Shown: one piece after another, positions 17,516-33,297 of the stretch
Position numbering within the stretch: position 1 is the first letter of the stretch
Layout of the letters: the number at the start of each line of letters is the position of its first letter
IMG/VR virus record: IMGVR_UViG_3300017963_000192
Location: 1-64,000 of that record
Strand: one strand, 5' to 3'
Length of the DNA stretch: 64,000 bases
Made by a program: the position numbers and the translations under genes
The notes under the pieces: model-generated
Told to the model about the DNA's origin: nothing
Database searches by the model: none
Seen by the model: only the letters and a program-made list of their open reading frames with translations

Positions 17516-17776
17516 ATTATTTTCTTCAAATCTTTTTAATTGCTCTAATTTGTTTGCTAAATCTCTTTCCTCCTTAATTTTACGTAATCTATCTATTTTC
17601 GATTTTTTTATTTTATTTAAATAATCTGATTTTAATTTATGATGTTCTGGTAATTTTTGTAACCACAAACTAACAGAACTTTTAGATACATTTAACTCTT
17701 TTGCTATTTTATTAATAGTAAATCCTTGTTTTCTTAAATTAATAGCTTTATTTTTTTCTATTATCTTCTTTTTCAT
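16970..17776 (-). CDS. HTH + HNH homing endonuclease fusion; intron-internal HNH start at 17464 (MWKIEK, 164 aa)
   Basis: N-terminal HTH GFTINKIAKELNVSKSSVSLW; LLHR..VHHKNGDRFDNRIENL; C-terminal CPNC..CSKSC. Confidence 0.85.
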   Translation of the reverse strand: MKKKIIEKNKAINLRKQGFTINKIAKELNVSKSSVSLWLQKLPEHHKLKSDYLNKIKKSKIDRLRKIKEERDLANKLEQLKRFEENNVLVAQVDEHHPSNKERSMWKIEKIINKGDYLYAVVKNHPYASKYGYVLLHRIIIENHLKRLLNSNEIVHHKNGDRFDNRIENLEVMNSKEHNKLRSKEQGKKMVLLKCPNCKKLFELPFNKLSTRFGKKFRACSKSCGTSFSYALRNERTIELERAVSENIVRIFKRFHDNSEQTIDNWDA

Positions 17777-17794
17777 TTATTCCTCCAATAAATG

Positions 17795-17868
17795 TGACTC
17801 CACTGAGAATCGAACTCAGTACCTCGACCTTAAAAGGGTCTTGCTGCTACCAATTGAGCTATGGAGTC
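17795..17868 (-). tRNA. trnK: tRNA-Lys(UUU) copy 1
   Basis: Acceptor GACTCCA/TGGAGTC, loop CTTTTAA, T-arm CTGAG TTCGATT CTCAG. Confidence 0.85.
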
Positions 17869-17874
17869 ATTATG

Positions 17875-17949
17875 TGCCAAGGGGCAGAATCGAACTGCCG
17901 ACACACGGATTTTCAGTCCGCTGCTCTACCGAAATTGAGCTACCTTGAC
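17875..17949 (-). tRNA. trnF: tRNA-Phe(GAA)
   Basis: GCGGA CTGAAAA TCCGT; full cloverleaf. Confidence 0.92.
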
Positions 17950-17955
17950 ATAATG

Positions 17956-18453
17956 TTATCTTTCAAATTCTCCTATTATTTCATATTTATCCTTATCTAT
18001 TTTTATATTTTTCCTATAAAAGCGATAAAACATTCCATGTAGAAAATAAGGTCTAAGTTTGTGTTCTGTTATATGCCTGTCTATGGGACGCTTATTATTT
18101 TCATCATAATCTGTATGCGTTCCTACGTACTTTCTAAAGTATTCGTGTTGTCTATCAAGTTGTTTTAAAAGTTTTTCTGGTATTCTATACACTTTATAAA
18201 ACCACTGGTATTCGTAATCAAAGAGTTCACCCTCTTCAAACTCCCATCCTTCTCTTTCGCAAACTTGTCTCCACTCTTCTTTCTCTTCCTTATTAAACGG
18301 TATTTCATGTACAATTTCTTTATCAAATGCAAAATAAACTCTCTCTCCTTCCCACAACATAATTCCTGTTAATGGACCATCCCAGTAAGCTAGATGGTAC
18401 AGAAATCTCGTTTGTCCATTAGTTTCTTTTGTTAGTTCATCAAGAGTTTTCAT
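17956..18453 (-). CDS. hypothetical phage protein
   Basis: 165 aa; YWDGPLTG motif. Confidence 0.65.
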   Translation of the reverse strand: MKTLDELTKETNGQTRFLYHLAYWDGPLTGIMLWEGERVYFAFDKEIVHEIPFNKEEKEEWRQVCEREGWEFEEGELFDYEYQWFYKVYRIPEKLLKQLDRQHEYFRKYVGTHTDYDENNKRPIDRHITEHKLRPYFLHGMFYRFYRKNIKIDKDKYEIIGEFER

Positions 18454-18456
18454 TTT

Positions 18457-18756
18457 TTATCCTGCATATTTCATTTTATCTCTGTATTCCTCTAAAATAG
18501 AAATTAACTTTTCTACCCCTTTTTTCTTTAGTACAAAAGCATCCGAATACGGGGAACCATAGGTCAGTATTCTCCATATTTGCCTTAACCTATTTCTTAA
18601 ACTTGGTTTACCAGTTATATTCCCATATTGATAAACTGAAAAATACAATAGAGATGGTTTCCCTTCTATTTCGAAATCCTCATCAAGAACTATTTGAATA
18701 AGTTCTGTATGACAATCACATTCAATATATTTTGGTTCAAACATTTGACAACTCAT
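18457..18756 (-). CDS. hypothetical phage protein
   Basis: 99 aa; SD AAGGAGG. Confidence 0.65.
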   Translation of the reverse strand: MSCQMFEPKYIECDCHTELIQIVLDEDFEIEGKPSLLYFSVYQYGNITGKPSLRNRLRQIWRILTYGSPYSDAFVLKKKGVEKLISILEEYRDKMKYAG

Positions 18757-18774
18757 ATCTATAACCTCCTTATG

Positions 18775-18848
18775 TGCGTCCTCTGAGAATCGAACTCAGT
18801 ACCTCGACCTTAAAAGGGTCTTGCTGCTACCAATTGAGCTATGGACGC
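18775..18848 (-). tRNA. trnK: tRNA-Lys(UUU) copy 2 (different acceptor stem)
   Basis: Body identical to copy 1; acceptor GCGTCCA/AGGACGC. Confidence 0.8.
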
Positions 18849-19083
18849 TTTAATAATCTAATAGAAAAACTTAATTCAAACTTGATAAGTTTTAATTTCA
18901 AGACCCATCCTAAAGTTTTAGATTCTATCCAAGTTTCAATACCGATATTAAATATAAAATCTTTATAGATTCCAGCAAATAATAAAATGTGTTCTCCATC
19001 AATTAAAGGATTTCTTGTTTTGTATGTAAAGAATCTCTTACTTTTACATTTGTACCATATGTCATTCATATTAATCTCCTATT

Positions 19084-19156
19084 TCCGCTCGACCGGAATC
19101 GAACCGATTGCCTCTCAGTTATCAGCCGAGTGCTCTACCTATTGAGCTACGAGCGG
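19084..19156 (-). tRNA. trnI: tRNA-Ile(GAU)
   Basis: CTCGG CTGATAA CTGAG. Confidence 0.9.
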
Positions 19157-19335
19157 TTAAGCAACATATTTTATATTTTTTCTCAAATCATAAAATATTG
19201 CAAACTGTAACCATCTAAAACAACCTATTTTCCACCCGTATGTTTTGAGTTTAGGAATTACTTCAAATCTGTATAACAGTATCCCTGGTACAGTATTCTT
19301 TGCTAATCCAATATTAATTATCATAGTTCCTCCTT

Positions 19336-19411
19336 TGGCGAGAGTGGGAGTCGAACCCACAGATTACAGAGTTTTTGGGACTCCAGCCTTTTCCAATTTA
19401 GCCATCTCGCC
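19336..19411 (-). tRNA. trnL: atypical tRNA-Leu(CAA): C33, 7-nt variable region
   Basis: GGAGT CCCAAAA ACTCT; Leu-type D-arm; A73. Confidence 0.6.
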
Positions 19412-19769
19412 TTAATTTGTTTCTTTTTGCTTGGTATGATCTATGACCTTCTCTACAAAGATCACATCTACATCCATGAGCATATTTGCTATGTGTTCCA
19501 TGATTTTCTTTTTTAAGTAAATTATGATGATAGTCACTATGACATTTTCTACACCATACAACACATTTTTTTAATTCTTTTTCTCTTCTCTCTTCAGACC
19601 AAGACCATATTTTATGATCTTCCTTTTCCTTTGGATTTTTATGATGTAATTCCAACTTTTCTATCGAACCACATTTTTCACATACTTTGTCTTTAAAAAA
19701 TTCTAATCTTCTTTTCCTTACCCATAATTTAGCATATTCTCTTTGTTTGTTAACATCCTTATAAGACAT
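19398..19769 (-). CDS. free-standing HNH endonuclease
   Basis: CEKCGS..LELHHK..CVVWCRKCH; C-terminal HGT..Y..GCRCDLC. Confidence 0.85.
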   Translation of the reverse strand: MSYKDVNKQREYAKLWVRKRRLEFFKDKVCEKCGSIEKLELHHKNPKEKEDHKIWSWSEERREKELKKCVVWCRKCHSDYHHNLLKKENHGTHSKYAHGCRCDLCREGHRSYQAKRNKLRRDG

Positions 19770-19790
19770 ACTAATACTCCTTCAATTAAT

Positions 19791-19872
19791 TAGGAGCGAA
19801 GGGAGTTGAACCCTTACACCTTTCGGCATTGGAGCTTAAATCCAATGTGTCTACCAGTTCCACCACGCTCCC
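19791..19872 (-). tRNA. trnL: tRNA-Leu(UAA)
   Basis: TTGGA TTTAAGC TCCAA, long variable arm. Confidence 0.92.
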
Positions 19873-19877
19873 ATATG

Positions 19878-19956
19878 TGCCCCACCTCCGATTCGAACGG
19901 AGACGCTTACGCACAGGGCCTAAACCTGTTGACTAGACCAATTCGTCTAATGGGGC
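19878..19956 (-). tRNA. trnL: tRNA-Leu(UAG)
   Basis: ACAGG TTTAGGC CCTGT, variable arm GCGTAAGCGT. Confidence 0.88.
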
Positions 19957-20063
19957 TTACTTAATTTTAAAAGACCTCTACATTCAGGACATTGCCAAGA
20001 ATGTACAATATCAGTCATTATTTCAAAGACCTTTAAACATTTAAAACATACAAATCTTTTCAT
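19947..20063 (-). CDS. 38-aa Zn-ribbon peptide (not in the ORF track)
   Basis: MKRFVCFKC..WQCPECRG, SD GGAGAGG. Confidence 0.5.
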   Translation of the reverse strand: MKRFVCFKCLKVFEIMTDIVHSWQCPECRGLLKLSKPH

Positions 20064-20078
20064 ATACCTCTCCTTATT

Positions 20079-20154
20079 TCCCCATGACAGGATTCGAACC
20101 TGTAAAGATTTAGTCCCTCAAACTAACGCCTCTACCAGATCGGGCTACATGGGG
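20079..20154 (-). tRNA. trnL: tRNA-Leu(GAG) with 6-nt variable region
   Basis: TTAGT TTGAGGG ACTAA; acceptor CCCCATG/CATGGGG. Confidence 0.75.
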
Positions 20155-20160
20155 TTTTAT

Positions 20161-20553
20161 TTAATTTCTTATAACAACTTGCCTGCCAAACCATGTTTTA
20201 AGAGGGTCAAATCCTCCTTTTATTAAAGTTTCTACATAACCCTGACTTCTTCGTACTTCATCATATTCTTTTCTTTCTTGTTCTTCTCTGTCATTTAATT
20301 CTTGTTGTTCATCTTCCAATTCAACTTCTTTATATATCATATCGAGGTCCATTTCAACAATTTCATTTATTTCATAAAGTTCGGCGTGTTCAAGCTGATT
20401 ATCTCCAGTATAATATTCTTTAATAACTTTGATAAGTTCTACTTTAGCAGATTCTAGTGTTTTTGAATCCAAGTCAATAACATTAAGTCCACATCCTATT
20501 GTGTAATCACATCCTTCCGCTTCTTGAACTATGTGTGCCTTATAAACTTTCAT
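20161..20553 (-). CDS. hypothetical phage protein
   Basis: 130 aa, acidic. Confidence 0.6.
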   Translation of the reverse strand: MKVYKAHIVQEAEGCDYTIGCGLNVIDLDSKTLESAKVELIKVIKEYYTGDNQLEHAELYEINEIVEMDLDMIYKEVELEDEQQELNDREEQERKEYDEVRRSQGYVETLIKGGFDPLKTWFGRQVVIRN

Positions 20554-21251
20554 TTTATTTATCCCCCTTTCTATTCTCTCTTAACTCTATGCAAATAGAG
20601 CTATTACACTCTTCTCCAAAATTAACTTTGCAATCGCATACGCTACATCTCCAACCCTTAATATATTCATTTATTTCGAAAAATTCTAAATCTACACCTG
20701 TAGCTTTCATCTCTTACTTCCTTCAAATATATTTAATGACCTTCTAATGCCAATCTAATTAAATCCCCTTTAACTGTTTTCATTATACCTTCCTTATGGT
20801 TGAATCACTTCATCTTCTTTCAACTCTTTAATATCTTTATCGAATTCTCCATTAGCAAACTTTTGAAGCACTTCAAGATTATCAAGAACCGCTTTAACTT
20901 TATTCTTGCTGAGATTAAATCCACCTCTATAGAAATTCCCTTTAATCTTTACCATTGGAACTCCAGAGCCAAGTTTAGGAAGACCTTCCTTATCTTTTGG
21001 GACAAATTTGTAGAAGTGTTCGATGGTACTTGGTATTACTTCTTCGCCAGTTTCATCTTTTTCTAATTTAACTTTCTTCATTTCAATCTCCTTTTTTAAT
21101 TTTTTCTTTAAATTTTTCCAGTCTTTCTTTACTCTTTTTTTTAGCTTCTTCGCTTCTTTCTTTAAGAAGACCTTTCTTTGTAACATTAGATAGTATATAA
21201 TCTTGGATATCTATTTTATCTTTCTTCATCTTAATCTCCTTAATTTTAATG

Positions 21252-21324
21252 CGGGGCTGACGAGTTTTGATCTCGCTACCTCTTGCGTGACAGGCAAGCA
21301 CTCTCCCAATTGAGCTACAGCCAC
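21252..21324 (-). tRNA. trnD: tRNA-Asp(GUC), degenerate T-loop
   Basis: CTTGC CTGTCAC GCAAG; G73; T-loop ATCAAAA; 2:71 mismatch. Confidence 0.75.
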
Positions 21325-21360
21325 CATAAAAGTTATACCACAGCCCCATTATAAATTAGA

Positions 21361-21717
21361 TTATCTTTCATCTTTTTCCAAACCCAAGCATTGCTTTAAG
21401 TAAGCTGCTAAATCTGCATCTTCTTCATTAGCCTCTTCTTTGTATTCTTCTAGTAGTTCTATAATTCTTTCTTTTAATGATTGGAATTTGAATTCTTTCT
21501 TTTTGCCTGGTTCTAAATGAACATTATACCAGTTATCCCTCATTTTTGTAGCTTGGTCAAACGCATCTAAAGCATTTAATAGATACTCTGCTAAAATGTG
21601 GTCTGGTGTGTTACTGCCATTCTCTGCACTTGAAATATTAATTGCTTCCTTAATTTTCTCTCTTAAATCCATACATACCTCCCTTACTCCTTGTTCTTTT
21701 TTATAAATTTTATACAT
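21361..21717 (-). CDS. hypothetical phage protein
   Basis: NGSNTPDHILAEYL..RDNWY motif. Confidence 0.6.
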   Translation of the reverse strand: MYKIYKKEQGVREVCMDLREKIKEAINISSAENGSNTPDHILAEYLLNALDAFDQATKMRDNWYNVHLEPGKKKEFKFQSLKERIIELLEEYKEEANEEDADLAAYLKQCLGLEKDER

Positions 21718-22203
21718 TCTTGAAAACCTGCAACAAAGTATGATTGTTCAGTTGCAGTCATATTTAATTTATCACTTATCTTTATTGCAATGATTCCAGC
21801 TTCTTCTATATTTGGTAATAAATTATCTAACGTATCCATTTATCTTTACTCCTTTTGTGTATTGATATCCTTCATTTCATTTCTCTTTATAAGTTATTTT
21901 ATTTAAATATATCTTTTAATATTTAAATTTATACCTCTCATATTTATTAAAATCACAATAATATGCATCACCATCTTCCCATACCCACGTTTTTAGATGA
22001 TTACATTGCCCTTCCCCTTTTCTTACGATGCAACTCGTAGGACCAAGTATATTTAAGCAGAAATCTACTCCCATTATCACATCATATAAAGGGCAATAGG
22101 TAGGATGGGCTGATTTAGCATTTTCACTTGTTATCATAACAATTCTATTTATTTTACCAGTACCTTTACAATTAAGCATCTCCCTTACTCCTTGTTCTTT
22201 TTT
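21679..22203. repeat. 24-bp direct repeat containing two SD motifs (21679-21702, 22180-22203)
   Basis: Minus strand AAAAAAGAACAAGGAGTAAGGGAG, followed closely by ATG in both copies. Confidence 0.75.
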
Positions 22204-22476
22204 TATCTGGTCTTGTAACCAAAAATAGAGCTTATCTATGGTGAACTTTTCATTATAGAACGGAAGTGTTACTTCCCAATCAATCTTCTTTTCTGAAAGA
22301 TATTCAATCATATATCCAACAAGCATCCTTTCATCCAGTTCAATCTCCCCATAACTCCCCATTCCAGCTACAATAGATATCCCTTCTTCTGACAGTTCTA
22401 TTTGTTTGTATCCTTTAGTTTCTTCTCCATATATGGTGTTGTTGTTTTCTCTCATCCAATTCCAAAATTCTTTCAT
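21916..22476 (-). CDS. hypothetical protein, probably a fusion of two small genes
   Basis: Internal SD repeat and ATG at 22179 (MLNCKG..). Confidence 0.55.
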   Translation of the reverse strand: MKEFWNWMRENNNTIYGEETKGYKQIELSEEGISIVAGMGSYGEIELDERMLVGYMIEYLSEKKIDWEVTLPFYNEKFTIDKLYFWLQDQIKKEQGVREMLNCKGTGKINRIVMITSENAKSAHPTYCPLYDVIMGVDFCLNILGPTSCIVRKGEGQCNHLKTWVWEDGDAYYCDFNKYERYKFKY

Positions 22477-22505
22477 ACTCCCCCTCTACCGACAAACATA
22501 ATTAT

Positions 22506-22595
22506 TTGAACTAACATAGCCTAAAGGCTATGGATTCCTGATCTGAGCTTATTACATCTACACTCATATCTCTCAAACTGTTTCACAGTTTCGCT
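22506..22595 (-). mobile_element. orphan IS200/IS605 (tnpB)-type right end / omegaRNA-like remnant
   Basis: GGAATC CATAGCC TTTA GGCTATG T TAGTTCAA; upstream hairpin AAACTG TGAAA CAGTTT; no transposase or tnpB nearby. Confidence 0.6.
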
Positions 22596-22618
22596 TATTC
22601 TCCATAAGTTAAGTGAAA

Positions 22619-23293
22619 TTACTCGCTTAATTCTTCTATGCTATAAATTTCCATATCTTCATATTTATCAGGCTTCAACCCAGAAGATGTTAAAGCGTTC
22701 CATAAAGCTTCTGCTTCAATTTCTAATTCTTTTCTTGATGTACTTTCACTCTCAAAAATAAATCTGTATTCTTCTTGAGGTTCATCAACACGCATCAGTT
22801 CTTCAACTTCATCGTCTATTTTATAGCCCTTTCTCTCCAGCATTTCTGCTAAATCAGAAAGTTTACTAAAAAATTGTTTCATCGTTCCCGCAGTTTTCGT
22901 TACTTGTTCAGAGGTTAGCCCTAGTTCTTTTGCAATTTCTATTATTCTATTTCTATAAGGCTTGTATATTTCGTAGGCTTTTTTATATCTCTTTATCTTA
23001 TCTCTTAATTCTGTGTTTTCTTTAGAGAAATTGTCTATTATCTCGTTCTTTTCTTTTAATAACTCTTTGTATTTCTCTAATCTTTTCTTGCTTTTTAATT
23101 TACTCTCTTTATAACTTTCTTCTTTTATTTCTTCTATTTGTTTATAATGATTATCACAAATCTCTTTTATTTTATTTTCATAATATTCTCTTAACTCATC
23201 TTCTTTTTCTTTATAAATCTTCTCAACTTTTGTTTTTTGAGCACTTAAAATCTTATCAAGTTTTTCTTTAGTCATCCGATAAGTTTTCGACAT
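22619..23293 (-). CDS. coiled-coil hypothetical protein
   Basis: 224 aa, K/E-rich heptads; SD AAGGAG. Confidence 0.7.
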   Translation of the reverse strand: MSKTYRMTKEKLDKILSAQKTKVEKIYKEKEDELREYYENKIKEICDNHYKQIEEIKEESYKESKLKSKKRLEKYKELLKEKNEIIDNFSKENTELRDKIKRYKKAYEIYKPYRNRIIEIAKELGLTSEQVTKTAGTMKQFFSKLSDLAEMLERKGYKIDDEVEELMRVDEPQEEYRFIFESESTSRKELEIEAEALWNALTSSGLKPDKYEDMEIYSIEELSE

Positions 23294-23368
23294 ATTCTTA
23301 TCTCCTTAATATAACATTAATAATTATATAAAAATATGTCTCATTTAAAGTCAATAAAAAAATACAAT

Positions 23369-23439
23369 TTGCGGGTGACAGAATTGAACTGTCCTGGGCG
23401 GCTTATGAGACCGTTGAGTAACCACTACTCTAACCCGCA
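23369..23439 (-). tRNA. trnM: tRNA-Met(CAU), initiator-like
   Basis: ACGGT CTCATAA GCCGC; fMet-like GCGGG acceptor, A11:U24, TTCAA T-loop; lacks the 3 G-C anticodon pairs. Confidence 0.75.
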
Positions 23440-23442
23440 ATG

Positions 23443-23716
23443 TGTCAGTTTCTAATAGTGAGGATTCATCGGGTAGCTAATCCCTCCACCACACGTTCGG
23501 CTTCACTGACAAGCTCGGTTGCACAGAGGAGTCCTGTTTAGGACACTGGTGTCCGTCCTCTCTTTACCTATAAAGGGTTAATTTAAAAGTTTTTGATATC
23601 GCTGTGCCAACGATAAAAGAGTTATATAGTACCCTATTTCTCTTGAATATTCAATGACTCTAGTTGTCTCAGTTCCTTTCGGTCACTGTTTAGAATATTC
23701 TGCTATATAACCCAAG
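23443..23716 (-). ncRNA. unidentified multi-domain structured RNA
   Basis: Several long stems, a kink-turn motif and no ORF; see findings. Confidence 0.6.
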
Positions 23717-23719
23717 ATG

Positions 23720-23771
23720 AAGAGGCGGAAAGGATCGAAAACCCATTGTACTGCCATTGTACTACGCCTCT
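23720..23771 (-). pseudogene. internally deleted tRNA (Gln-like)
   Basis: Acceptor AGAGGCG/CGCCTCT and D-arm GTAC AATGGCA GTAC intact; anticodon-to-T-arm segment reduced to 19 nt. Confidence 0.65.
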
Positions 23772-23953
23772 ATATTATTTAATTTCTCAATAATTTCCTT
23801 TTTGTTTTCTACAATTACTTGTGATAATTTTAATATCCCATAAAAACCTAATCTGTCTAAATCATTATGGTAATTTCTATAAAGCTTGTCAAGAAATTTA
23901 GCGAATTCTTTGTCTTTATCGCTAAAGAAATACTCCCAATTTTGTTTACTCAT
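23762..23953 (-). CDS. hypothetical phage protein
   Basis: 63 aa, SD GGGGG. Confidence 0.55.
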   Translation of the reverse strand: MSKQNWEYFFSDKDKEFAKFLDKLYRNYHNDLDRLGFYGILKLSQVIVENKKEIIEKLNNIEA

Positions 23954-23967
23954 AAAAACCCCCTATT

Positions 23968-24040
23968 TGACGCTAGGGGGAGTTGAACCCGCCATTACAG
24001 AGTTGAAAGCCCTGTGGCCTAACCATTAGCCGATAGCGCC
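23968..24040 (-). tRNA. trnE: tRNA-Glu(UUC)
   Basis: CAGGG CTTTCAA CTCTG. Confidence 0.88.
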
Positions 24041-24045
24041 TTATG

Positions 24046-24117
24046 TGGAGCCGAGGGGAATCGAACCCTCGTCTTTTTGCTTGCAAAGCAAACGCCTTCC
24101 CAGTTGGCTACGACCCC
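24046..24117 (-). tRNA. trnA: tRNA-Ala(UGC)
   Basis: TTTGC TTTGCAA GCAAA; G3:U70. Confidence 0.92.
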
Positions 24118-24178
24118 ATAAATAATGTTATTGTTGAATTTAAGTCAATGAATTTTTTATAATTATTAATAAAAAATG

Positions 24179-24263
24179 TAGGTCAGGAGGGATTCGAACC
24201 CCCATCGGTTTTACCCTACACTTCATTAGCAGTGAAGCCTCTTACCAGTTAGAGTACCTTTCC
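24179..24263 (-). tRNA. trnS: tRNA-Ser(GCU) with non-matching 3' acceptor strand (chimera)
   Basis: CTTCA CTGCTAA TGAAG, long variable arm; 5' GGAAAGG vs 3' CTGACCT. Confidence 0.65.
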
Positions 24264-25347: not shown

Positions 25348-25878
25348 TTAAGGATATTCTGATAGTATTTCTTTTAATTCTTTAATAGTTTGATCAGCAG
25401 ATTTATGTAAAATTCCAGTCCCGCCAGACTCTTTCCAGGCATTGATGTTTTTATCTCTATCATCTATTAGGATGGTATTTTTATTTTTTATAAAATCTTC
25501 TTTTTTATTAGAGAAATTTACTTTAATATCTCCTATTTCTCTTCTTGCCCACGCTTTTTTATCTTCTTTACAATTCTTAACAGAATTTGCGGGTGTTGTT
25601 AATAATTCTACATCATAATCTTTTAAAAAATTCCATAATTTTTTACCATCTGGCATCCAATCCATGTTCAACCAATAATGGTCAGTTTCTTTATTTATGG
25701 TTTTCCATAGTGCTGGTTCGCCTTTCTTTTTAGAGTATTCTCTTGGATTTTCATAGCCTAAATCCATAAAAGCTTTTTCGAAATCGGTAAGCACTCCGTC
25801 CATATCCACGTAAATTTTTCGTCTCGTATCCGAGACTTTGATTAAATCATTAATAGTTTTCATATTTCTAAAGTTCAT
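25348..25878 (-). CDS. 5'(3')-deoxyribonucleotidase (HAD) with MNF tag
   Basis: IYVDMDGVLTDF, ILIDDR..N. Confidence 0.88.
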   Translation of the reverse strand: MNFRNMKTINDLIKVSDTRRKIYVDMDGVLTDFEKAFMDLGYENPREYSKKKGEPALWKTINKETDHYWLNMDWMPDGKKLWNFLKDYDVELLTTPANSVKNCKEDKKAWARREIGDIKVNFSNKKEDFIKNKNTILIDDRDKNINAWKESGGTGILHKSADQTIKELKEILSEYP

Positions 25879-25886
25879 ATTGCATC

Positions 25887-26198
25887 CTAATGAGCAGTCT
25901 CTGTTTTAATAATATAATTTCTTGTATCATACATATCTTCATCATCATTATACAAAGGATGAATTATATCATTATATTTAAGTTCTTCTTCAATAACATC
26001 GGACGGTTTTATAAATGATTGAAGTTCTGATCCGTATGACCTATCCTCATTTCTTAATTCGTGATGTAAAGATTTCCATGTGTATTCAAGAGAACCGCCT
26101 TCATCTATAAGCTCATTTTTATTATATAATCTATATATGTTATCGCTATAAGCTTTTTTAATTAATTTATCAATATTATTTATTGATATAAAATTCAT
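25887..26198 (-). CDS. hypothetical protein with MNF tag
   Basis: MNFISINNIDKLIKKA. Confidence 0.7.
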   Translation of the reverse strand: MNFISINNIDKLIKKAYSDNIYRLYNKNELIDEGGSLEYTWKSLHHELRNEDRSYGSELQSFIKPSDVIEEELKYNDIIHPLYNDDEDMYDTRNYIIKTETAH

Positions 26199-26199
26199 A

Positions 26200-26901
26200 T
26201 TAATCCTCTTCTATATAATACTCTGGATTTTCAACATCCCTTTTTTCTAATTTATGATCAAAAGTAGTATAGTATGGTTTAACTTCTTTTTCAAAAGGTA
26301 ATTCAATTTCACCGATTAAGTTCAAATATTTATCTAAAACTTTATTTTTAATTTCTCTTATCTCATTAGGAGTCATATCGTAAGTTCTAATAAAGGGTTC
26401 TCCGTATTCTTGTTCATAAGCCCATTCAAAGAGTTTATCTATATCTTGATATTTGAAATATATATCCATCCAACCTTTAGGATATTCTTCAACTTTACTA
26501 TTGTTAACAACACCCCCGAAGTATTCAATTAGGTAAATATAAAAAAATCTATTGGGGTCAAGTGAATCTGATTCTCTGCTTATAATATAATGAATAATTT
26601 CTTCTTCGTTTTCTCCCGCTTCTGATTTAAAAGCTTCAATTTCACTCTTAAATGCTTTAACAACTTCTGCATTTATCATAGATTCTGTAATATCGTCTTC
26701 TTTTGTTAAGCCGTACTGCGTTTTTAACATAAGAGGTGTCATACCCTTAGTATAGTAATCTTTCCAGGCATTTTTGAAATCGTTTTTGAATTTTTCATTA
26801 TTTAGTAACGATTCTATAGCGTTATTGAAATTAGAGATAGTTATTTTTTTATTACTCTTTTTTAATAATTCATTTATATTAATTATTTTTCTAAAATTCA
26901 T
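26200..26901 (-). CDS. hypothetical protein with MNF tag
   Basis: Start set at MNFRK (TAATG overlap with the upstream stop). Confidence 0.7.
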   Translation of the reverse strand: MNFRKIININELLKKSNKKITISNFNNAIESLLNNEKFKNDFKNAWKDYYTKGMTPLMLKTQYGLTKEDDITESMINAEVVKAFKSEIEAFKSEAGENEEEIIHYIISRESDSLDPNRFFYIYLIEYFGGVVNNSKVEEYPKGWMDIYFKYQDIDKLFEWAYEQEYGEPFIRTYDMTPNEIREIKNKVLDKYLNLIGEIELPFEKEVKPYYTTFDHKLEKRDVENPEYYIEED

Positions 26902-28613
26902 TATTCTCCCCAAATCTCATTAAGGATTTCATATATTAAATAAATTTGATCATCGTTAAATTTCCATCTTACATTTACGTTTTTATCTGCCCATTCCATT
27001 GGAGTATTTGTACCTTTTTCTTCACTCATAGCACACCAATCGGTACAATTATGTAAAAAAATTCCTGATGTGATTGCAAAGTTATGATGAACGTCAACTG
27101 TCATATCAAAAACATCTTTTTTTATGTCTTGTTTTTTTATGCTTATTATTTTATGGTTAACTGTATTATTTTTATGGGTTTTCATATGATTTCCTAAACC
27201 ACCAGAGTTTCCGCAAATTTTACCACAAACAGAACATTCTATTGGCGTAGTGGCGTTTTTAATAGATGTTTTTCTCATTTTTTCTTTGTATTTAGGGTTT
27301 TTCCAAATTTCTGAATTTCGGTTGGATTGTTTTTGTCTCCAATCAGGTATTACTTCGTGAAAACTTTTTATATGATTGGACAATGCTCCAACATTTCCAA
27401 AAATTTTACCACAATAATTACATTTTTTACTTTTTTTATTTAATTCAATCATATTTTTAGACGCTGTTTTTTTGTGTTTTTTTGATTTGTTGTAATTAGT
27501 TAAATTTTTTGGTCCAGTTGTTTTACCTATAATTCCAACTCTTGTTTTTTGTTTTTTTCTAAATGCAGGATTTTCCCATAATTTTTTAAGAACAGTACTT
27601 CCTACTTTTTTTTGTTTTTCAGAATGAATTTTGTAGTGGTTTTCTTTAGTCATTATTTCTAAATTAGAGGGGTCATTGTTTTTTTTATTATTTTCATCCA
27701 TAAAATTTTTATGGTGACAAACTAATTGGTTTGTTCCAAATTTTTTTGTATAATATTGATAACCACCAAAATACTCATCTACCATCATTCTATGTGTTAA
27801 CTTCCATTTATTGACATTTAAGTTGTATATTTGTTCATAACCATCTTTATCTTTCCTATATAGAGGCATAAGACTGTCTCCAACAACTAAATCTTTAACT
27901 TCTTTATAAGTACCATCTCTCATCATAAATTTGTGATTATCAGTACAATCTACATATAAATCGTTATCTAGCGTGATTCTATATACCGTTGCATTTTTTT
28001 TAGTTTTTCTTACACTATGCCCTTTTCCAGGTACTATTTTACCTTCTGTTGTACAAGAATATACCCAAAATTCTTTTTCATTTACTAAATCTTTTATTTG
28101 TGTCTCTTTTCCATTTAATAAGGAAATTTTAGTATCTCCTGTTAAACACATTTCAGCTATATCTAAATCTTCCATAGCAGTAGCATCTATAATCTCATCT
28201 GGTATTTCATCTCTGTTTTCTCTATTAATTTTACCTTTATTCTTACAATGAAATTCAGGGTGATGTCTATTATTATTAACGTGATGTTCTGTAGCATTGT
28301 TCATTAATTCTCTAACATCATCTGAAATATCAAAAGTGACGCCATCGTCTTTACACTTATAATCCCATGTTACTAAAATATAAGGTTCAAGTTCTGGATC
28401 TTTATATTTGCTTTGGTCGTGATCTTCCCCTCTTTCGATTATACCCTCAAATCTATTACCAAATCTATTGTGAATTCTTTTACAGTATTTCTTTGTTAAG
28501 TCAATATGGTTTTTAGTTCTTTTATCAAAGAAATCTTTCATACCTTGAGTAATATTAAGTCCCATTGCTTGTCTAATCAATTCGTTTATGCTATCTGCTA
28601 ATTTAAAATTCAT
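26901..28613 (-). CDS. DUF5662/HD-like protein with MNF tag, interrupted by an intein
   Basis: HDQSK, HH..NRHHPE, DIAEM|CTDW. Confidence 0.75.
   Translation of the reverse strand: MNFKLADSINELIRQAMGLNITQGMKDFFDKRTKNHIDLTKKYCKRIHNRFGNRFEGIIERGEDHDQSKYKDPELEPYILVTWDYKCKDDGVTFDISDDVRELMNNATEHHVNNNRHHPEFHCKNKGKINRENRDEIPDEIIDATAMEDLDIAEMCLTGDTKISLLNGKETQIKDLVNEKEFWVYSCTTEGKIVPGKGHSVRKTKKNATVYRITLDNDLYVDCTDNHKFMMRDGTYKEVKDLVVGDSLMPLYRKDKDGYEQIYNLNVNKWKLTHRMMVDEYFGGYQYYTKKFGTNQLVCHHKNFMDENNKKNNDPSNLEIMTKENHYKIHSEKQKKVGSTVLKKLWENPAFRKKQKTRVGIIGKTTGPKNLTNYNKSKKHKKTASKNMIELNKKSKKCNYCGKIFGNVGALSNHIKSFHEVIPDWRQKQSNRNSEIWKNPKYKEKMRKTSIKNATTPIECSVCGKICGNSGGLGNHMKTHKNNTVNHKIISIKKQDIKKDVFDMTVDVHHNFAITSGIFLHNCTDWCAMSEEKGTNTPMEWADKNVNVRWKFNDDQIYLIYEILNEIWGE
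27048..28148 (-). mobile_element. 367-aa intein with HNH domain and two C2H2 zinc fingers
   Basis: CLTGDT start; DMTVDVHHNF..LHN|C end; THR..VCHHKN..NN..NL. Confidence 0.92.
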
Positions 28614-28623
28614 CTAAAAATTC

Positions 28624-29136
28624 CTATATTTTATTAAATTTATCAAATAATCTTTTACCTTCTTCAGTTTGTGGTCCTATAATATGTATACTCGTTTTAT
28701 TTGTAATATCCATAGCAAATTGTATCATAGCTTCTCCTATACCCATATTTTGATATTCAGGATTAACCTCAATTGCATTAATACTCTCTCCCCATATTAT
28801 TAAAACGTTATGTTTTGTATATTTTGCTGTATTATAATCATCCCAAACAAACCAACCGATTATTTTATTTTCATTTAAATGTATTGTTTGTATTTTAGGT
28901 TTATTGACAAGTCTTTGCAAATAACATAATTCTCCATTAGGTAGTGTTAGTGGTCTAATATAATTATTTATTTCTTCATCTGATAATCCCCATTGCCTTT
29001 TTAATCTATTAACACTGTATTGATAATTGGGACTATCTTCGTATGTTTTTTGATTTTCTAAATATTCTTCTTCATCAAATTCTTCGGAAATTTTTCTAAA
29101 AAAACCATCTATGTTATTTACCTTTCTAAAGTTCAT
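28624..29136 (-). CDS. GNAT-fold acetyltransferase-like protein with MNF tag
   Basis: IEVNPEYQNMGIGEAM..QTEEG. Confidence 0.65.
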   Translation of the reverse strand: MNFRKVNNIDGFFRKISEEFDEEEYLENQKTYEDSPNYQYSVNRLKRQWGLSDEEINNYIRPLTLPNGELCYLQRLVNKPKIQTIHLNENKIIGWFVWDDYNTAKYTKHNVLIIWGESINAIEVNPEYQNMGIGEAMIQFAMDITNKTSIHIIGPQTEEGKRLFDKFNKI

Positions 29137-30132
29137 TTAAAAAACTCCCATCTTTGCTAAATCTTCATCCCATTCAGTAGTGTCTTTATTAGACAATTCG
29201 TCTAAAAGAAACTTATCAACATTATAATGTTCTTCTTCAATATAGTCAAGCATACTTCCTGTTTGATGTGACGTATTTAATGCTATATTAATAGTTACAA
29301 TTTTATCTTTAAGTGATTTATTTTTTAAGTTTTTAAGTTCGTAATCTATTTCTTCTATTGTTTCTCTTGTTTCTACAATTCCTTGCTGTTCCCAATAATC
29401 AAACCACAGAGGAAAAACTCTTTTCTCATAAAAATTTTTAATCATTTCTTGTATGTCGGGGTGTTCTTTTATTATTGGATCAAGATTTTCAGAATCAAAA
29501 TACCAATATGTGTCAATATATTCTTCTAATTCTTGAGGATTATCTAGATTTAAATTTTCAAGATATTCAATATTTTCTTTTGTGTTTTTATAAGATTCTT
29601 CGTCTTCTGTTTCTTTAAAATAATCCAACTCTTCATTTAGACTTTGAATAGTATATTCTATTTCTTCTTCAAAAATATTTTTGAAATATTTTAGATTGTC
29701 TAAAAAAAATTCTTTTTTAAAATCGTGCTGATCTTTTTCTCCTATTTCATCTAAATATCTGTAGTATTCGTCTTCAACCATATTTAAAGAAAATTCTTCA
29801 TCATGTGAATCTATTAATCTACTTCTAGCCCAAGTTTCGGCAGAGAGAAGAGCGTGTGTTTCTAACCACTTATCAAAGACTTTTAATAAATCTTCTCCAA
29901 CTTTATTCAATACTTTATTAAGATTGACTTCTATTATGGAGAGTATGTTATCTTTTCTTTTTGGGTTTATACCTAAAGATTGTTCGATTTTGTATTTCTT
30001 ATATTCCCATTCATATATAGTTTCTAGATTTTCTGCCATATCTTCAGATACATCTATACCTAAATTTGATGTTTCTATAAATTTAGATAATTTAATTAAA
30101 TCAAATATGTTTTTAATACTTTTAAAATTCAT
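29137..30132 (-). CDS. acidic hypothetical protein with MNF tag
   Basis: MNFKSIKNIFDLIKLS. Confidence 0.7.
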   Translation of the reverse strand: MNFKSIKNIFDLIKLSKFIETSNLGIDVSEDMAENLETIYEWEYKKYKIEQSLGINPKRKDNILSIIEVNLNKVLNKVGEDLLKVFDKWLETHALLSAETWARSRLIDSHDEEFSLNMVEDEYYRYLDEIGEKDQHDFKKEFFLDNLKYFKNIFEEEIEYTIQSLNEELDYFKETEDEESYKNTKENIEYLENLNLDNPQELEEYIDTYWYFDSENLDPIIKEHPDIQEMIKNFYEKRVFPLWFDYWEQQGIVETRETIEEIDYELKNLKNKSLKDKIVTINIALNTSHQTGSMLDYIEEEHYNVDKFLLDELSNKDTTEWDEDLAKMGVF

Positions 30133-30588: not shown

Positions 30589-31377
30589 TTATAAAAATAG
30601 TCTTAAACTCACATCTACTATTGAGTCTGTAGAATTAACATTTACTGGTGGATTTGATGTATATTCTCTTCTAAATCCAATCTTAAATCCTATTCCGCTT
30701 TTCTTTGTCCATTTTAAATCAAGAAAATCAAAACTCAAAGATGTTTCAAGTATAAATCTATATTCAGAAAAATCGTACAAAGGAATGTAATAACAAAAGA
30801 ATTGATATTTGATTACTTTAAAAAAGAATATGTCTATTCTATATCTAAAAGAATGGACAAAAGTATTAACAACATTTCTTGTTTTATAATCTTCATATTG
30901 ATATGTTGGAGCATAACTAATATCCATTAATAAATAGGGGTTATTAAATATAATTAATTTAGGACCTATTCCAGTATTATTTCTGTATACGAGCTGTTCC
31001 ATTTCGCTGTATTTGTTAAATGAAAAGAAAAACAATTCAAATCTTTTATGTAGTAAATAGTCTAAGTTAACTTTTCCAAAACCTTCATTAGAATGTATTT
31101 CAGATCCATCTGATTTTTCTTTGCTATATGAAAAATTAAAAGATGTTTTGTACGTGAAAATACCATTAAAATACATTATGCTGGTACTACCACTTATCCC
31201 TATTGCGTCTATATTTCCAGTTTGGTTTTTAAAAGAAAAGTCAAGAGTGTAGAACCACTTTTTGTCATCTTTCTCTTTCTTTTTTAAAGGTTGGGTTGTC
31301 CATAGTATATTACCAATATTAGCAAATACAGGTAATGTGAATAACATTATTATTGTTAATAATATTAGTTTCTTCAT
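30589..31377 (-). CDS. outer-membrane beta-barrel (DUF481-like)
   Basis: Signal peptide MKKLILL..VFA; QTGN motif; alternating beta pattern; terminal SLRLFL. Confidence 0.7.
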   Translation of the reverse strand: MKKLILLTIIMLFTLPVFANIGNILWTTQPLKKKEKDDKKWFYTLDFSFKNQTGNIDAIGISGSTSIMYFNGIFTYKTSFNFSYSKEKSDGSEIHSNEGFGKVNLDYLLHKRFELFFFSFNKYSEMEQLVYRNNTGIGPKLIIFNNPYLLMDISYAPTYQYEDYKTRNVVNTFVHSFRYRIDIFFFKVIKYQFFCYYIPLYDFSEYRFILETSLSFDFLDLKWTKKSGIGFKIGFRREYTSNPPVNVNSTDSIVDVSLRLFL

Positions 31378-31458
31378 AGAATAACCCACTAACTCTTAAA
31401 ATGTATTTAAAAGATAAAAATTTTTTAAGAATTTTTAAGGTTAGTGGGTTACAAAATA

Positions 31459-32346: not shown

Positions 32347-32700
32347 TATCCCCAGTAATTTTAAATTCGAATATTTTTTACAACTTCTTTTACCAATTCT
32401 TCAGATATTGATATCAATTTTCTTGAAATTATTAGTATTATAGATAGGGCAAGCCAACCAAAAGGTAAAAGCATACTAGGAATTACAATAATCCAATATT
32501 CTTTAGGATTGCTATAATCATATTTAGTAAACCTATTAGTTAGTAGGTGCAATGTTTCAGGGAAAACAAAGTTAAATATATTTGGTAAATACCCGAAACA
32601 GAATAAAAAACTATTTCCTAAAAATTCTATCATAATCTTAAATTGTTATGTCCCTTATTAAAAAATTAATAATTTTTATCAAGCATTTTTTTATAATAAT

Positions 32701-33297
32701 CTAAAAATTAAGTGAAATTCCTCCCCCAAAGCTTCTAGTACCTTTGTATGAAACCCCACTATAAAAATGTACTCTTGTATTTCCTAATACCTTTTTAAAA
32801 GGTCTCCATGATATAGAACCTCCAGCAGAGTATACTCCGACATATAAATGTGCTCCTAATCCTTCAATTATATTAATTTTTAGTGGTTCTAAACTAAAAA
32901 ATTGGACTCCTATTTTAGGATCAACGTAGCTATTTCCTATTCCACTCTCTACCATTGCTGCCATACTTATTGTAAAGGGAAAGTATCTTATTTTTTCTTT
33001 TTTAGTTAACACTTCAAATTTAATTTCGTATATTAAAGGTTTATCTCCTTCTATTTGAAATTCGACCTTTTGTATTACAACCTTTGTTTCATCAATAATT
33101 TTATAATGTATTTTTGGTATTGTATTTATAAGATTGTTCCATCTTTTAGCTTGCCATCTTATTATTGCTTTATCTTTTTCTAGTCTTTTATATAATTCTT
33201 CAGCCTCTTTTATTGAAAAACACACGTCACCCGTATCTCCTTTAGTAGATGTAGCAAATATAATCAAAGCTAATAAAACAAATATAATCTTTTTCAT
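32701..33297 (-). CDS. exported protein in the lysis module (spanin-like?)
   Basis: Signal peptide; 4-nt overlap with the upstream TM gene. Confidence 0.45.
   Translation of the reverse strand: MKKIIFVLLALIIFATSTKGDTGDVCFSIKEAEELYKRLEKDKAIIRWQAKRWNNLINTIPKIHYKIIDETKVVIQKVEFQIEGDKPLIYEIKFEVLTKKEKIRYFPFTISMAAMVESGIGNSYVDPKIGVQFFSLEPLKINIIEGLGAHLYVGVYSAGGSISWRPFKKVLGNTRVHFYSGVSYKGTRSFGGGISLNF

What the first reader, a model, noticed from the sequence alone, without database searches (positions are those of the whole stretch)
25348..30132. Six consecutive unrelated genes share a 16-aa N-terminal tag (MNF-x2-hydrophobic-x2-I-x2-LI-K/R): candidate capsid-loading or export signal
Seen: MNFRNMKTINDLIKVS, MNFISINNIDKLIKKA, MNFRKIININELLKKS, MNFKLADSINELIRQA, MNFRKVNNIDGFFRKI, MNFKSIKNIFDLIKLS. 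M1-N2-F3, I9 and K/R14 are invariant, with hydrophobic 6/9/12/13 (amphipathic helix). Codons differ (AAC/AAT, ATT/ATA), so conservation is at the protein level. The downstream domains are unrelated (HAD nucleotidase, DUF5662/HD-like, GNAT-like, three unknowns). I saw no other ORF in the window with this start. Established: T4 internal proteins share a short N-terminal capsid-targeting sequence removed by the prohead protease. Inference: a modular effector-cargo array, packaged and injected with the DNA or otherwise co-targeted.
Basis: partly seen in the sequence, partly recalled or inferred. Interest (0 to 1): 0.88.

Follow-up and report, generated by a model that had tools for sequence, protein, structure and literature searches.

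The report
Shared N-terminal address tag, jumbo phage
Six neighbouring, otherwise unrelated genes of an uncultured giant bacteriophage all begin with the same 16-residue peptide, which looks like a detachable address label sending different proteins to one common partner, perhaps the inside of the virus head.

Summary
Six abutting minus-strand genes (25348-30132) start with M-N-F-x-x-hydrophobic-x-[N/S/T]-I-x-x-[L/F]-[I/L/F]-[K/R]-x-[A/S]; no other ORF in the window does. Conservation is at the protein level only: synonymous codons follow codon usage and the flanking DNA is not conserved.

A seventh tagged gene lies elsewhere in the same >=217 kb phage genome, inside a tail-fibre-like operon. 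Related uncultured jumbo phages carry the same tag on orthologues and on other cargo. That cargo includes CCA-adding enzyme, Tpt1/KptA, a GNAT, DUF5661/DUF5662 modules, and three small low-complexity proteins in a structural operon. I found no gene-start instance in cellular genomes. Many deoxyribonucleotidase homologues lack the tag, and AlphaFold places it as a lower-confidence coil-plus-helix appendage.

Other large phages show analogous arrays with their own tag flavour. The best reading is a modular docking peptide for one phage-encoded partner. A capsid-targeting role like that of T4 internal proteins is the leading candidate (about 0.4) but is unproven. The tag has no Glu cleavage motif and the head is not T4-like. 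The main rival (about 0.3) is a cytoplasmic hub for tRNA-repair and nucleotide enzymes next to the tRNA cluster.

The parts
29137..30132 (-). Tagged gene 1, 331 aa. All-alpha protein of unknown function. Tag encoded at 30085-30132.
   Evidence: ORF and N-terminus. 22 metagenomic homologues, many with the same N-terminal motif. AlphaFold: body pLDDT about 90, residues 1-20 about 55, coil 1-8 then a helix from residue 9. No significant fold match in PDB or BFVD.
28624..29136 (-). Tagged gene 2, 170 aa. Weak GNAT acetyltransferase match at residues 84-147. Tag encoded at 29089-29136; this is the most divergent copy (F-F-R in place of L-I-K).
   Evidence: A tagged GNAT (131 aa) sits in the syntenic array of relative L077.
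26901..28613 (-). Tagged gene 3, 570 aa. DUF5662 protein interrupted by an intein. Tag encoded at 28566-28613.
   Evidence: Pfam DUF5662 (3e-19, starting at residue 26) and Intein_splicing (5e-21), with C2H2 fingers; PHROG HNH endonuclease hits. The spliced 203-aa extein aligns end to end with the intein-free DUF5662 module of L077, tag helix included.
27048..28148 (-). Intein within gene 3 (aa 156-522), carrying an HNH-type homing endonuclease and two C2H2 zinc fingers.
   Evidence: Boundaries set by the Cys at the intein start, the His-Asn-Cys junction at its end, and alignment to the intein-free relative.
26200..26901 (-). Tagged gene 4, 233 aa, unknown function. Tag encoded at 26854-26901. 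The ATG shares one base with the stop codon of gene 3.
   Evidence: No Pfam or PHROG match. In IMG/VR it is found only in the two contigs of this phage.
25887..26198 (-). Tagged gene 5, 103 aa, unknown function. Tag encoded at 26151-26198.
25348..25878 (-). Tagged gene 6, 176 aa. HAD-family 5'(3')-deoxyribonucleotidase-like enzyme. Tag encoded at 25831-25878; the catalytic DxD motif is at residues 25-27.
   Evidence: PHROG 2643 at 2e-30 and a weak Pfam NT5C match. AlphaFold pLDDT 95, tag residues about 82. Foldseek top hits are human and mouse deoxyribonucleotidases. Homologues occur with and without N-terminal extensions.
17794..24263 (-). Context: a cluster of 13 tRNA genes starting about 1 kb downstream of the array on the same strand.
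   Evidence: ARAGORN and Rfam.

Best explanation
The 16 residues are a portable docking (address) peptide. Residues 1-8 form an extended stretch with F3 and a hydrophobic residue at position 6. A short helix follows from residue 9, with I9, L12, I13 and A/S16 on one face. The peptide is attached ahead of unrelated folded domains and is not needed for their folds.

I infer that all tagged proteins of one phage bind the same phage-encoded receptor through this peptide. The most likely receptor is the interior or scaffold of the assembling prohead. On that reading the array is a variable set of cargo proteins loaded into the large capsid, and possibly delivered with the DNA. This is functionally like the capsid-targeting sequence of T4 internal proteins, but with a different sequence and without its Glu cleavage site.

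Shown here: the tag is real, modular, selected at the protein level, seen only in phage sequence in the searches run, and conserved across a lineage. It sits on changing cargo, and AlphaFold models it as a lower-confidence N-terminal appendage in both predicted structures.

Inferred only: a single common receptor, the capsid as destination, removal of the tag, and injection.
For: Non-random and confined to gene starts:
- Six pattern hits against 0.01 expected in the window.
- In IMG/VR the exact pattern starts ORFs of 100 aa or more only in the two contigs of this phage, apart from one membrane-like 101-aa ORF. It gives a seventh gene there.
- A tag HMM scores every full-length match (at least 18.8 bits) at an ORF N-terminus. 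The next-best hits (12.6 bits or less) are degenerate internal copies in fusion proteins.

Protein-level selection.

Not part of the folds. AlphaFold gives coil 1-8 plus a helix from residue 9, with lower confidence than the body in two different proteins.

Modularity across relatives:
- L077 carries the tag on a GNAT, a DUF5662 fusion, the 346-aa orthologue and NT5C.
- L213 carries it on Tpt1/KptA and a CCA-adding enzyme.
- L214 carries it on a 113-aa protein and a CCA-adding enzyme.

Genome-specific flavours, as expected if tag and receptor co-evolve:
- The window phage uses M-N-F on 7 of 7 tags.
- L077 has I-G at the two residues after the Phe in 3 of 4 tags.
- Unrelated large phage L082 has about five to six neighbouring genes, including NT5C and a CCA-adding enzyme, starting with a 10-residue M-[I/L]-K-L-x-x-L-[I/L]-x-E-like motif.

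Link to virion modules:
- The seventh gene lies between a 552-aa and a 277-aa ORF, about 1.2 kb upstream of a 680-aa ORF with a virion-structural PHROG hit.
- In L207, three tagged proteins of 73, 118 and 96 aa abut one another in the operon that runs from the head genes to a 1757-aa fibre. Two of the three are low-complexity, Pro/Lys/Glu/Thr-rich. L207's major capsid protein is 72% identical to that of the window phage.
- A distant homologue of the 331-aa family lies 4 kb from a ClpP-like, head-maturation-protease-like gene.

Precedent: T4 CTS (PMC3012670, PMC5694885), the P1 DarB N-terminal signal (PMC9024508), and packaged effector enzymes including GNATs and nucleotidyltransferases (PMC5512222).
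Against: - There are no virion proteomics; the phage is uncultured.
- The tag has no conserved Glu, and no shared protease motif could be recognised. T4, phiKZ and SPN3US proteases all cut after Glu (PMC5694885).
- The head is not T4-like. The major capsid protein belongs to phrog_2522, and its nearest cultured relatives are phiRSL1- and Erwinia Y3-type jumbo myoviruses at about 25% identity.
- None of the head-module proteins read (capsid protein, probable portal and others) carries the tag. No scaffold or protease gene of this phage was identified.
- The six-gene array lies outside the structural module, beside tRNA genes.
- The recurring cargo is typical cytoplasmic tRNA and nucleotide metabolism: CCA-adding enzyme, Tpt1, a HAD nucleotidase, and possibly HD-type modules (HD_4 in L082; DUF5662 as read by the first-stage reader).
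- Degenerate internal tags survive in fusion proteins, so a strictly N-terminal position may not be required.
- The structural nature of the L207 and L081 neighbours rests on weak PHROG hits and gene order.
Confidence: 0.4

Rival explanations
1. Cytoplasmic hub. The tag docks tRNA-repair and nucleotide-metabolism enzymes onto one phage-encoded scaffold or enzyme (for example an RNA ligase or another hub protein). This would form a tRNA maintenance complex that works beside the phage's own tRNA set. Nothing is packaged.
For: - The array lies about 1 kb upstream of 13 tRNA genes.
- Recurrent tagged cargo includes CCA-adding enzyme (internal copies in L079), Tpt1/KptA RNA 2'-phosphotransferase, a HAD phosphatase-like NT5C, DUF5662, and a GNAT.
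- The L082 flavour tags NT5C, a CCA-adding enzyme, a P-loop (Zeta-like) kinase and an HD_4 protein.
- Untagged RlaP nucleotidyltransferase genes adjoin the arrays in L077 and L079.
- Fusions between tagged modules fit proteins that work together.
Against: - The tag also sits on small low-complexity proteins in a structural operon (L207) and on a 154-aa protein inside a tail-fibre-like operon, which have no evident RNA role.
- Several tagged proteins have no enzymatic signature.
- No candidate hub protein was identified.
- Known phage RNA-repair enzymes, such as T4 Pnkp and Rnl1, need no such tag (background knowledge).
Confidence: 0.3
2. Timing or processing signal. The tag is a shared recognition peptide for a phage or host protease or unfoldase, acting as a degron or an inhibitory propeptide. 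A set of early proteins would then be switched off or on together.
For: The peptide is N-terminal, modelled with lower confidence than the body, and dispensable for the fold. A ClpP-like protease gene lies near a homologue of the 331-aa family in a distant relative.
Against: I recognised no match to known N-terminal degron classes (from memory, not tested). No protease gene is linked to the arrays in the window phage. The idea does not explain the position of tagged genes in structural operons.
Confidence: 0.08
3. Membrane-targeting amphipathic helix, or an export signal.
For: The tag carries a net positive charge (often +2 to +4) and has a hydrophobic face. Neighbouring genes encode secreted or outer-membrane proteins, including DUF481.
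Against: Mean hydrophobicity is near zero and there are acidic residues at positions 10-11. The hydrophobic moment is moderate and not clearly above shuffled controls. There is no hydrophobic core, twin-arginine motif or lipobox. The cargo is made of soluble nucleotide and RNA enzymes.
Confidence: 0.05
4. A nucleic-acid-level feature: a conserved 5' coding element for translation initiation, a repressor-binding site, or a recombination site for cassette exchange. On this reading the peptide itself has no function.
For: The genes abut and are probably translationally coupled, and the array's content varies between relatives.
Against: Synonymous codon sharing equals the codon-usage expectation (84 against 82.3). 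Third positions are the least conserved, and the upstream 30 nt are at background. Substitutions are conservative at the amino-acid level (I/V/L, K/R, N/D). The tag persists across orthologues that are 40-55% identical and inside fusion proteins far from any start codon.
Confidence: 0.03

Closest known systems
Capsid targeting sequence (CTS) of phage T4 internal proteins IPI, IPII, IPIII and Alt, and the hypervariable internal-protein loci of T-even phages
   Same: A short N-terminal peptide is shared by otherwise unrelated proteins of one phage, and the genes sit in variable loci. In T4, ipI lies about 1 kb upstream of the tRNA cluster and ipII/ipIII lie a few kb downstream. The window array lies about 1 kb upstream of its own tRNA cluster. 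T4 CTS-bearing proteins include an enzyme (Alt) and anti-restriction proteins (PMC3012670, PMC5694885).
   Different: There is no sequence similarity to the T4 peptides read from the T4 record. The tag is 16 residues with no Glu-ended cleavage motif. The head genes are not T4-type. Packaging, processing and injection are untested here. The cargo is mostly tRNA and nucleotide enzymes.
N-terminal packaging signal of phage P1 DarB
   Same: An N-terminal stretch of more than 9 and up to 30 residues is enough to direct a protein into a myovirus capsid (PMC9024508).
   Different: The P1 signal is described for one protein and is not a motif shared by many. No sequence relation was tested, and P1 packaging needs the other Dar proteins in order.
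Propeptides of ejection and inner-body proteins of phiKZ-like jumbo phages (SPN3US gp53/gp54, phiKZ gp93)
   Same: The setting is a jumbo phage. Diverged paralogues there keep identical N-terminal residues, which the authors consider CTS-like (PMC5694885).
   Different: Those propeptides are mostly longer than 100 residues, end at A/S-x-E sites, and sit on paralogous structural proteins rather than on unrelated enzymes.
Cargo-loading peptides of encapsulins and encapsulation peptides of bacterial microcompartments
   Same: A short terminal peptide, often helical, is fused by a flexible link to diverse enzymes and binds the inner face of a protein shell. The encapsulin shell has the HK97 fold of phage capsids (background knowledge).
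   Different: No encapsulin or microcompartment shell gene was seen among the neighbours scanned. Encapsulin family 1 peptides are C-terminal. The setting here is a tailed phage.
Polyvalent proteins of phages and conjugative elements (Iyer et al. 2017, PMC5512222)
   Same: The domain repertoire overlaps: GNAT, Pol-beta-type nucleotidyltransferase, Zeta-like kinase. Relatives carry multi-module fusions of 985 and 1137 aa. Those proteins are predicted to be delivered with the DNA.
   Different: In the window the modules are separate genes, each with its own tag. I found no description of a shared N-terminal tag in the passages I read. MuF and portal linkage were not examined.

Membership tests
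T4-type capsid targeting sequence (CTS) | A 10-20 residue N-terminal peptide shared by otherwise unrelated proteins of one phage | tested here: met
   Seven proteins of this phage share a 16-residue start and have no similarity beyond it.
T4-type capsid targeting sequence (CTS) | The peptide ends at a prohead-protease site, with cleavage C-terminal to Glu ((L/I)-x-E) | tested here: not met
   No conserved Glu at or after the end of the tag. Position 16 is A/S and positions 17-20 vary. The Glu rule is taken from PMC5694885.
T4-type capsid targeting sequence (CTS) | Sequence similarity to the T4 IP/Alt N-terminal peptides | tested here: not met
   The T4 ipI, ipII and ipIII N-termini read from NC_000866 do not resemble the tag consensus.
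T4-type capsid targeting sequence (CTS) | A T4-type head assembly module (gp20 portal, gp21 protease, gp22 scaffold, gp23 capsid protein) | tested here: not met
   The major capsid protein is phrog_2522 type. The nearest GenBank relatives are Virus Rctr197k (37%) and phiRSL1/Y3-type jumbo phages (about 25%), not T4-like phages. Protease and scaffold were not located in the about 95 kb read.
T4-type capsid targeting sequence (CTS) | Tagged proteins are present in virions, and the tag is sufficient to load a foreign protein | not testable with these tools
   The phage is uncultured and known only from metagenomic contigs.
Encapsulin or microcompartment cargo peptide | A shell gene (encapsulin or BMC-H/P) encoded with the cargo | tested here: not met
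   Pfam and PHROG scans of the array and its neighbours found no such gene. The only HK97-type shell protein found is the phage's own major capsid protein.
Sec, Tat or lipoprotein signal peptide | A hydrophobic core of about 10 or more residues after a basic N-region; a twin-arginine motif or lipobox | tested here: not met
   Mean Eisenberg hydrophobicity is about 0, charged residues lie at positions 7, 10, 11 and 14, and there is no RR motif or lipobox Cys.
Polyvalent proteins | Two to fifteen effector domains in a single polypeptide | tested here: not met
   Each window protein has at most one recognised effector domain after the tag, leaving aside the intein in the 570-aa protein. Multi-module versions exist only in relatives: the L077 1137-aa protein and the P0144 985-aa protein.
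Polyvalent proteins | Domain repertoire of conflict effectors (GNAT, Pol-beta NTase, kinases and others) | tested here: inconclusive
   GNAT, CCA-type nucleotidyltransferase and a Zeta-like kinase occur among the tagged proteins. They may equally be housekeeping tRNA and nucleotide enzymes.
5'(3')-deoxyribonucleotidase (NT5C, HAD superfamily), for the 176-aa protein | HAD fold with a DxD nucleophile motif and similarity to solved deoxyribonucleotidases | tested here: met
   D25 and D27 are invariant in 91 homologues. AlphaFold pLDDT is 95. Foldseek top hits are 2i7d and 1q92, probability 1.0. PHROG 2643 scores 2e-30. Substrate was not tested.

The most novel reading that the evidence does not exclude
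Large uncultured phages of several lineages use genome-specific N-terminal address peptides to load a changeable kit of tRNA-repair and nucleotide enzymes, plus small low-complexity proteins, into the capsid. The kit includes CCA-adding enzyme, Tpt1, a HAD nucleotidase, DUF5662 and HD_4 proteins, a GNAT and a P-loop kinase. It would be injected with the DNA as ready-made first aid against host tRNA- and nucleotide-targeting defences. If so, the tag would let the injected proteome of uncultured phages be read directly from sequence.
Probability: 0.2. Interest if true: 0.88.

Novelty: new variant of a known kind. Interest (0 to 1): 0.7.

Why it matters
If the tag is a loading or docking signal, it gives a sequence-only way to list which proteins an uncultured jumbo phage co-targets, and possibly which it injects. 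That question currently needs virion proteomics on cultured phages.

It would also point to an unexpected cargo class. tRNA-end repair and nucleotide enzymes would then act at the earliest stage of infection. The recurrence of the same logic with different tag flavours in unrelated large phages suggests a general and largely unnoticed design principle.

In practice, a 16-residue tag that loads foreign proteins into a very large capsid would be a useful tool, as the T4 CTS has been.

Tried and rejected
- GenBank phages: no DNA or protein match to the array.
- Nucleic-acid-level explanation: rejected by the codon and flank analysis.
- Promoter and terminator scan, and a k-mer search of intergenic regions: nothing above shuffled background, so no early or late assignment was possible.
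- Fold search of the 331-aa protein against PDB and BFVD: no significant match.
- IMG/VR pattern scan: apart from the two contigs of this phage, the roughly 60 other hits are short or spurious ORFs.
Only a handful were real tags.
- Exhaustive profile search of 1.84 billion representatives: lists only E <= 0.001 and so returned two proteins, not a catalogue.
- The idea that the phage is T4-like, so that T4 rules could be carried over: rejected by the capsid protein.
- The argument that, in cultured T4-like Flavobacterium phage immuto, a small gene at the gp67 position shares that phage's own tag flavour: kept only as a weak hint. T4 gp67 and gp68 do not share the IP-type N-terminus, and PHROGs gave no identification.
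- A possible hydrophobic-K-x-A protease motif near the capsid protein's N-terminus: judged too frequent by chance to count.
- Virus Rctr197k, the nearest GenBank capsid relative: too distant and poorly annotated to use.

Full report
**1. Observation**

The window is the first 64 kb of a 217,703-bp viral contig (IMG/VR UViG_3300017963_000192 = Ga0180437_10000071). A 111,658-bp IMG/VR contig, a 92,143-bp ENA contig and a 234,748-bp contig also carry genes of this phage.

On the minus strand, six genes lie head to tail from 30132 down to 25348. Stop and start codons abut or overlap. All six begin M-N-F and share I9, K/R14 and hydrophobic residues at positions 6, 12 and 13.

- No other ORF of at least 40 aa in any frame starts with MNF.
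- A degenerate DNA pattern for the tag hits 6 times against 0.01 expected.
- Beyond residue 16 the proteins are unrelated to each other.
The 176-aa protein is a HAD 5'(3')-deoxyribonucleotidase-like enzyme, the 570-aa protein is DUF5662 split by an intein, the 170-aa protein has a weak GNAT match, and three proteins have no family.

**2. Level of selection**

Where two tags have the same residue, they use the same codon 84 times against 82.3 expected from the phage's codon usage. Third codon positions are the least conserved (0.51 against 0.69). The 30 nt upstream and the 16 codons downstream are at background identity. The conserved object is therefore the peptide, not an RNA or DNA element. 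The copies are old and not recently converted.

**3. The tag is an appendage, not part of the folds**

- Among 120 listed homologues of the nucleotidase, 18 start within 11 residues of the catalytic DxD strand. About 80 carry some 12-45 residue N-terminal extension of varied sequence, and about 8 carry the window-type tag.
- The Pfam DUF5662 model begins at residue 26.
- AlphaFold gives the same layout in two unrelated tagged proteins: coil over residues 1-8 and a helix starting at residue 9. Confidence there is below that of the body: 82 against 98 in the nucleotidase, and 55 against about 90 in the 331-aa protein.
- Position 8 is N, S or T in all 16 aligned tags, which could be a helix N-cap.
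- The hydrophobic moment is moderate, so the helix is one-sided rather than strongly amphipathic.

**4. Distribution**

A stricter DNA pattern scanned over 2.9 million IMG/VR contigs starts ORFs of 100 aa or more only in this phage, apart from one membrane-like 101-aa ORF. It reveals a seventh tagged gene of 154 aa. That gene lies directly after a 552-aa ORF, just upstream of a 277-aa ORF, and about 1.2 kb upstream of a 680-aa ORF that has a virion-structural PHROG hit.

Related uncultured phages keep the tag on orthologues and put it on other cargo:

- L077: a GNAT (131 aa), an 1137-aa fusion ending in DUF5662, the 346-aa orthologue and the nucleotidase, all in the syntenic island.
- L213: a Tpt1/KptA RNA 2'-phosphotransferase and a 985-aa CCA-adding-enzyme fusion.
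- L214: a 113-aa protein and a CCA-adding enzyme.
- L102, L111 and L129: further tagged ORFs on short contigs.
- L207: three adjacent proteins of 73, 118 and 96 aa, the first two low-complexity.

L207 is a true relative of the window phage. Its major capsid protein is 72% identical and three further head-region proteins are 39-52% identical. Its tagged genes abut one another in the operon that runs from the head genes to a 1757-aa fibre.

A tag HMM separates cleanly. Every full-length hit is at an ORF start. Below that come only degenerate internal copies that precede modules inside fusion proteins. One of these internal copies begins V-N-F, as expected for a former GTG start.

A strict pattern found one hit in 596 Gb of representative bacterial and archaeal genomes. 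That hit is internal to a longer ORF and so is chance.

**5. The same logic elsewhere**

In L082, from another large phage (contig at least 309 kb), about five to six neighbouring genes start with a 10-residue M-[I/L]-K-L-x-x-L-[I/L]-x-E-like motif. They are a nucleotidase, a CCA-adding enzyme, a P-loop Zeta-like kinase and three unknowns. An HD_4 gene about 4 kb further on starts similarly.

The cultured T4-like Flavobacterium phage immuto has recurrent N-terminal motifs of its own on many genes.

Within the window lineage, flavours are genome-specific. The window phage uses M-N-F on 7 of 7 tags. L077 has I-G at the two residues after the Phe in 3 of 4 tags. This kind of concerted change is what co-evolution with one receptor per genome would produce.

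**6. What it is**

The robust inference, at about 0.75, is a modular docking peptide that brings unrelated proteins to one phage-encoded partner. The identity of that partner is open.

*Capsid or prohead (about 0.4).*
- The form matches the T4 capsid targeting sequence and the P1 DarB signal (PMC3012670, PMC5694885, PMC9024508).
- Tagged small low-complexity proteins, and the seventh gene, sit in structural operons.
- A distant homologue of the 331-aa family lies near a ClpP-like, head-maturation-protease-like gene.
- GNATs, nucleotidyltransferases and kinases are among the enzymes predicted to be delivered with phage DNA (PMC5512222).

Against this reading:
- There are no virion data.
- The tag has no Glu-ended protease motif.
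- The head is not T4-like.
- No tag is present on the head proteins read.
- The array lies outside the structural module.

*Cytoplasmic enzyme hub (about 0.3).*
- The array lies about 1 kb upstream of 13 tRNA genes.
- The recurrent cargo (CCA-adding enzyme, Tpt1, a HAD phosphatase-like enzyme, DUF5662 and HD_4 modules, a kinase) reads like a tRNA-end repair and nucleotide kit.

Minor rivals are a degron or propeptide, membrane targeting, and a nucleic-acid element. They are weaker for the reasons given under rival explanations.

**7. Comparison with known systems**

This is not a member of the T4 CTS family. Sequence, cleavage motif and head type all fail the membership test. It may nevertheless work like one.

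It differs from phiKZ-type propeptides in length, in the Glu site, and in that those sit on paralogous structural proteins. It differs from encapsulin and microcompartment peptides in that no separate shell gene is present. It differs from polyvalent proteins in that the modules here are separate genes, each with its own tag.

I found no description of this motif in the papers searched. That is weak evidence of novelty, because the library is partial.

**8. Verdict**

Novelty is a new variant of a known kind. Interest is 0.70. The finding is solid and extends to a whole lineage and, in analogous form, to other large phages, and the decisive experiments are clear. The function remains inferred.

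Noticed in passing
window 27048-28148 (-), inside the gene at 26901-28613: A 367-aa intein with an HNH-type homing endonuclease and two C2H2 zinc fingers interrupts a DUF5662 gene. The orthologous module in relative L077 is intein-free, and the spliced extein aligns to it end to end. DUF5662 is not a protein family I would expect to host an intein.
   Followed up: yes
window 17794-24263 (-): A cluster of 13 tRNA genes (Lys x2, Phe, Ile, Leu x4, Asp, Met, Glu, Ala, Ser) is interspersed with small ORFs, with an HNH endonuclease gene (16970-17776) directly downstream of it. Rfam also reports a marginal, short tRNA-like match at 23720-23771.
   Followed up: partly
L082:10001-15910 and 19783-20337 (JGI Ga0309773_1000395; the same protein is on a 309-kb contig): A different large phage has its own array. 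NT5C, a CCA-adding enzyme, a Zeta-like P-loop kinase and three unknowns start with a 10-residue M-[I/L]-K-L-x-x-L-[I/L]-x-E-like motif, and an HD_4 protein further on starts similarly. In most of them the motif ends L/I-x-E, which matches the T4 prohead-protease site as I recall it.
   Followed up: partly
L084 and L085 (Flavobacterium phage vB_FspM_immuto_2-6A, NC_055915, 97.9-160.4 kb): This cultured T4-like phage has two recurrent N-terminal motif classes on about ten genes: an M-K-K-S-Q-L...I-I-K-E type and an M-E-N-F-D-L-K-K-F-L-V-E-N-K-L-T type. They include small genes flanking the prohead protease. It could serve as an experimentally tractable proxy.
   Followed up: partly
L209:11767-13428 (-), head region of the window phage; also L207:5953-6144: Three adjacent paralogues of 234, 139 and 162 aa share a different N-terminal domain of about 45 residues and then diverge. 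A 63-aa version exists in relative L207. This is a second case of a shared N-terminal module in the same phage.
   Followed up: no
window 30589-31389 (-): The phage encodes a DUF481 outer-membrane beta-barrel-like protein with a signal peptide, conserved in relative L079. It is flanked by other secreted or membrane proteins (198 aa at 32701-33297 and 90 aa at 32361-32633).
   Followed up: no
window 859-4854 and 12652-14360: Three DNA methyltransferase genes lie at 859-1818, 3038-3916 and 3937-4854. A TnpB/transposase-like ORF (368 aa, phrog_10081) lies at 12652-13758, with an adjoining 200-aa ORF.
   Followed up: no
window 44113-62331 (-): A long run of glycosyltransferase, MptE-like, nucleotide-sugar epimerase and related genes follows two very large ORFs (1509 and 1320 aa) and a tail-fibre-like 761-aa ORF with a CBM_5_12 module. 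It may be a sugar-modification block. A Peptidase_M23 gene lies at 34183-34839.
   Followed up: no
T4 record NC_000866, 62-76 kb (L086): In T4, ipI lies about 1 kb upstream of the tRNA cluster and ipIII/ipII lie about 4.5 kb downstream on the same strand. This positional parallel to the window array is probably coincidental, because the window phage is not T4-like.
   Followed up: partly
L077:6305-9718 and L102: An unannotated domain with a conserved T-N-W-C-T...K-W-Q-T-D-x-K-S-G-W-F motif, followed by ankyrin repeats, occurs twice in tandem in the L077 1137-aa tagged fusion and again in L102. Its function is unknown.
   Followed up: no
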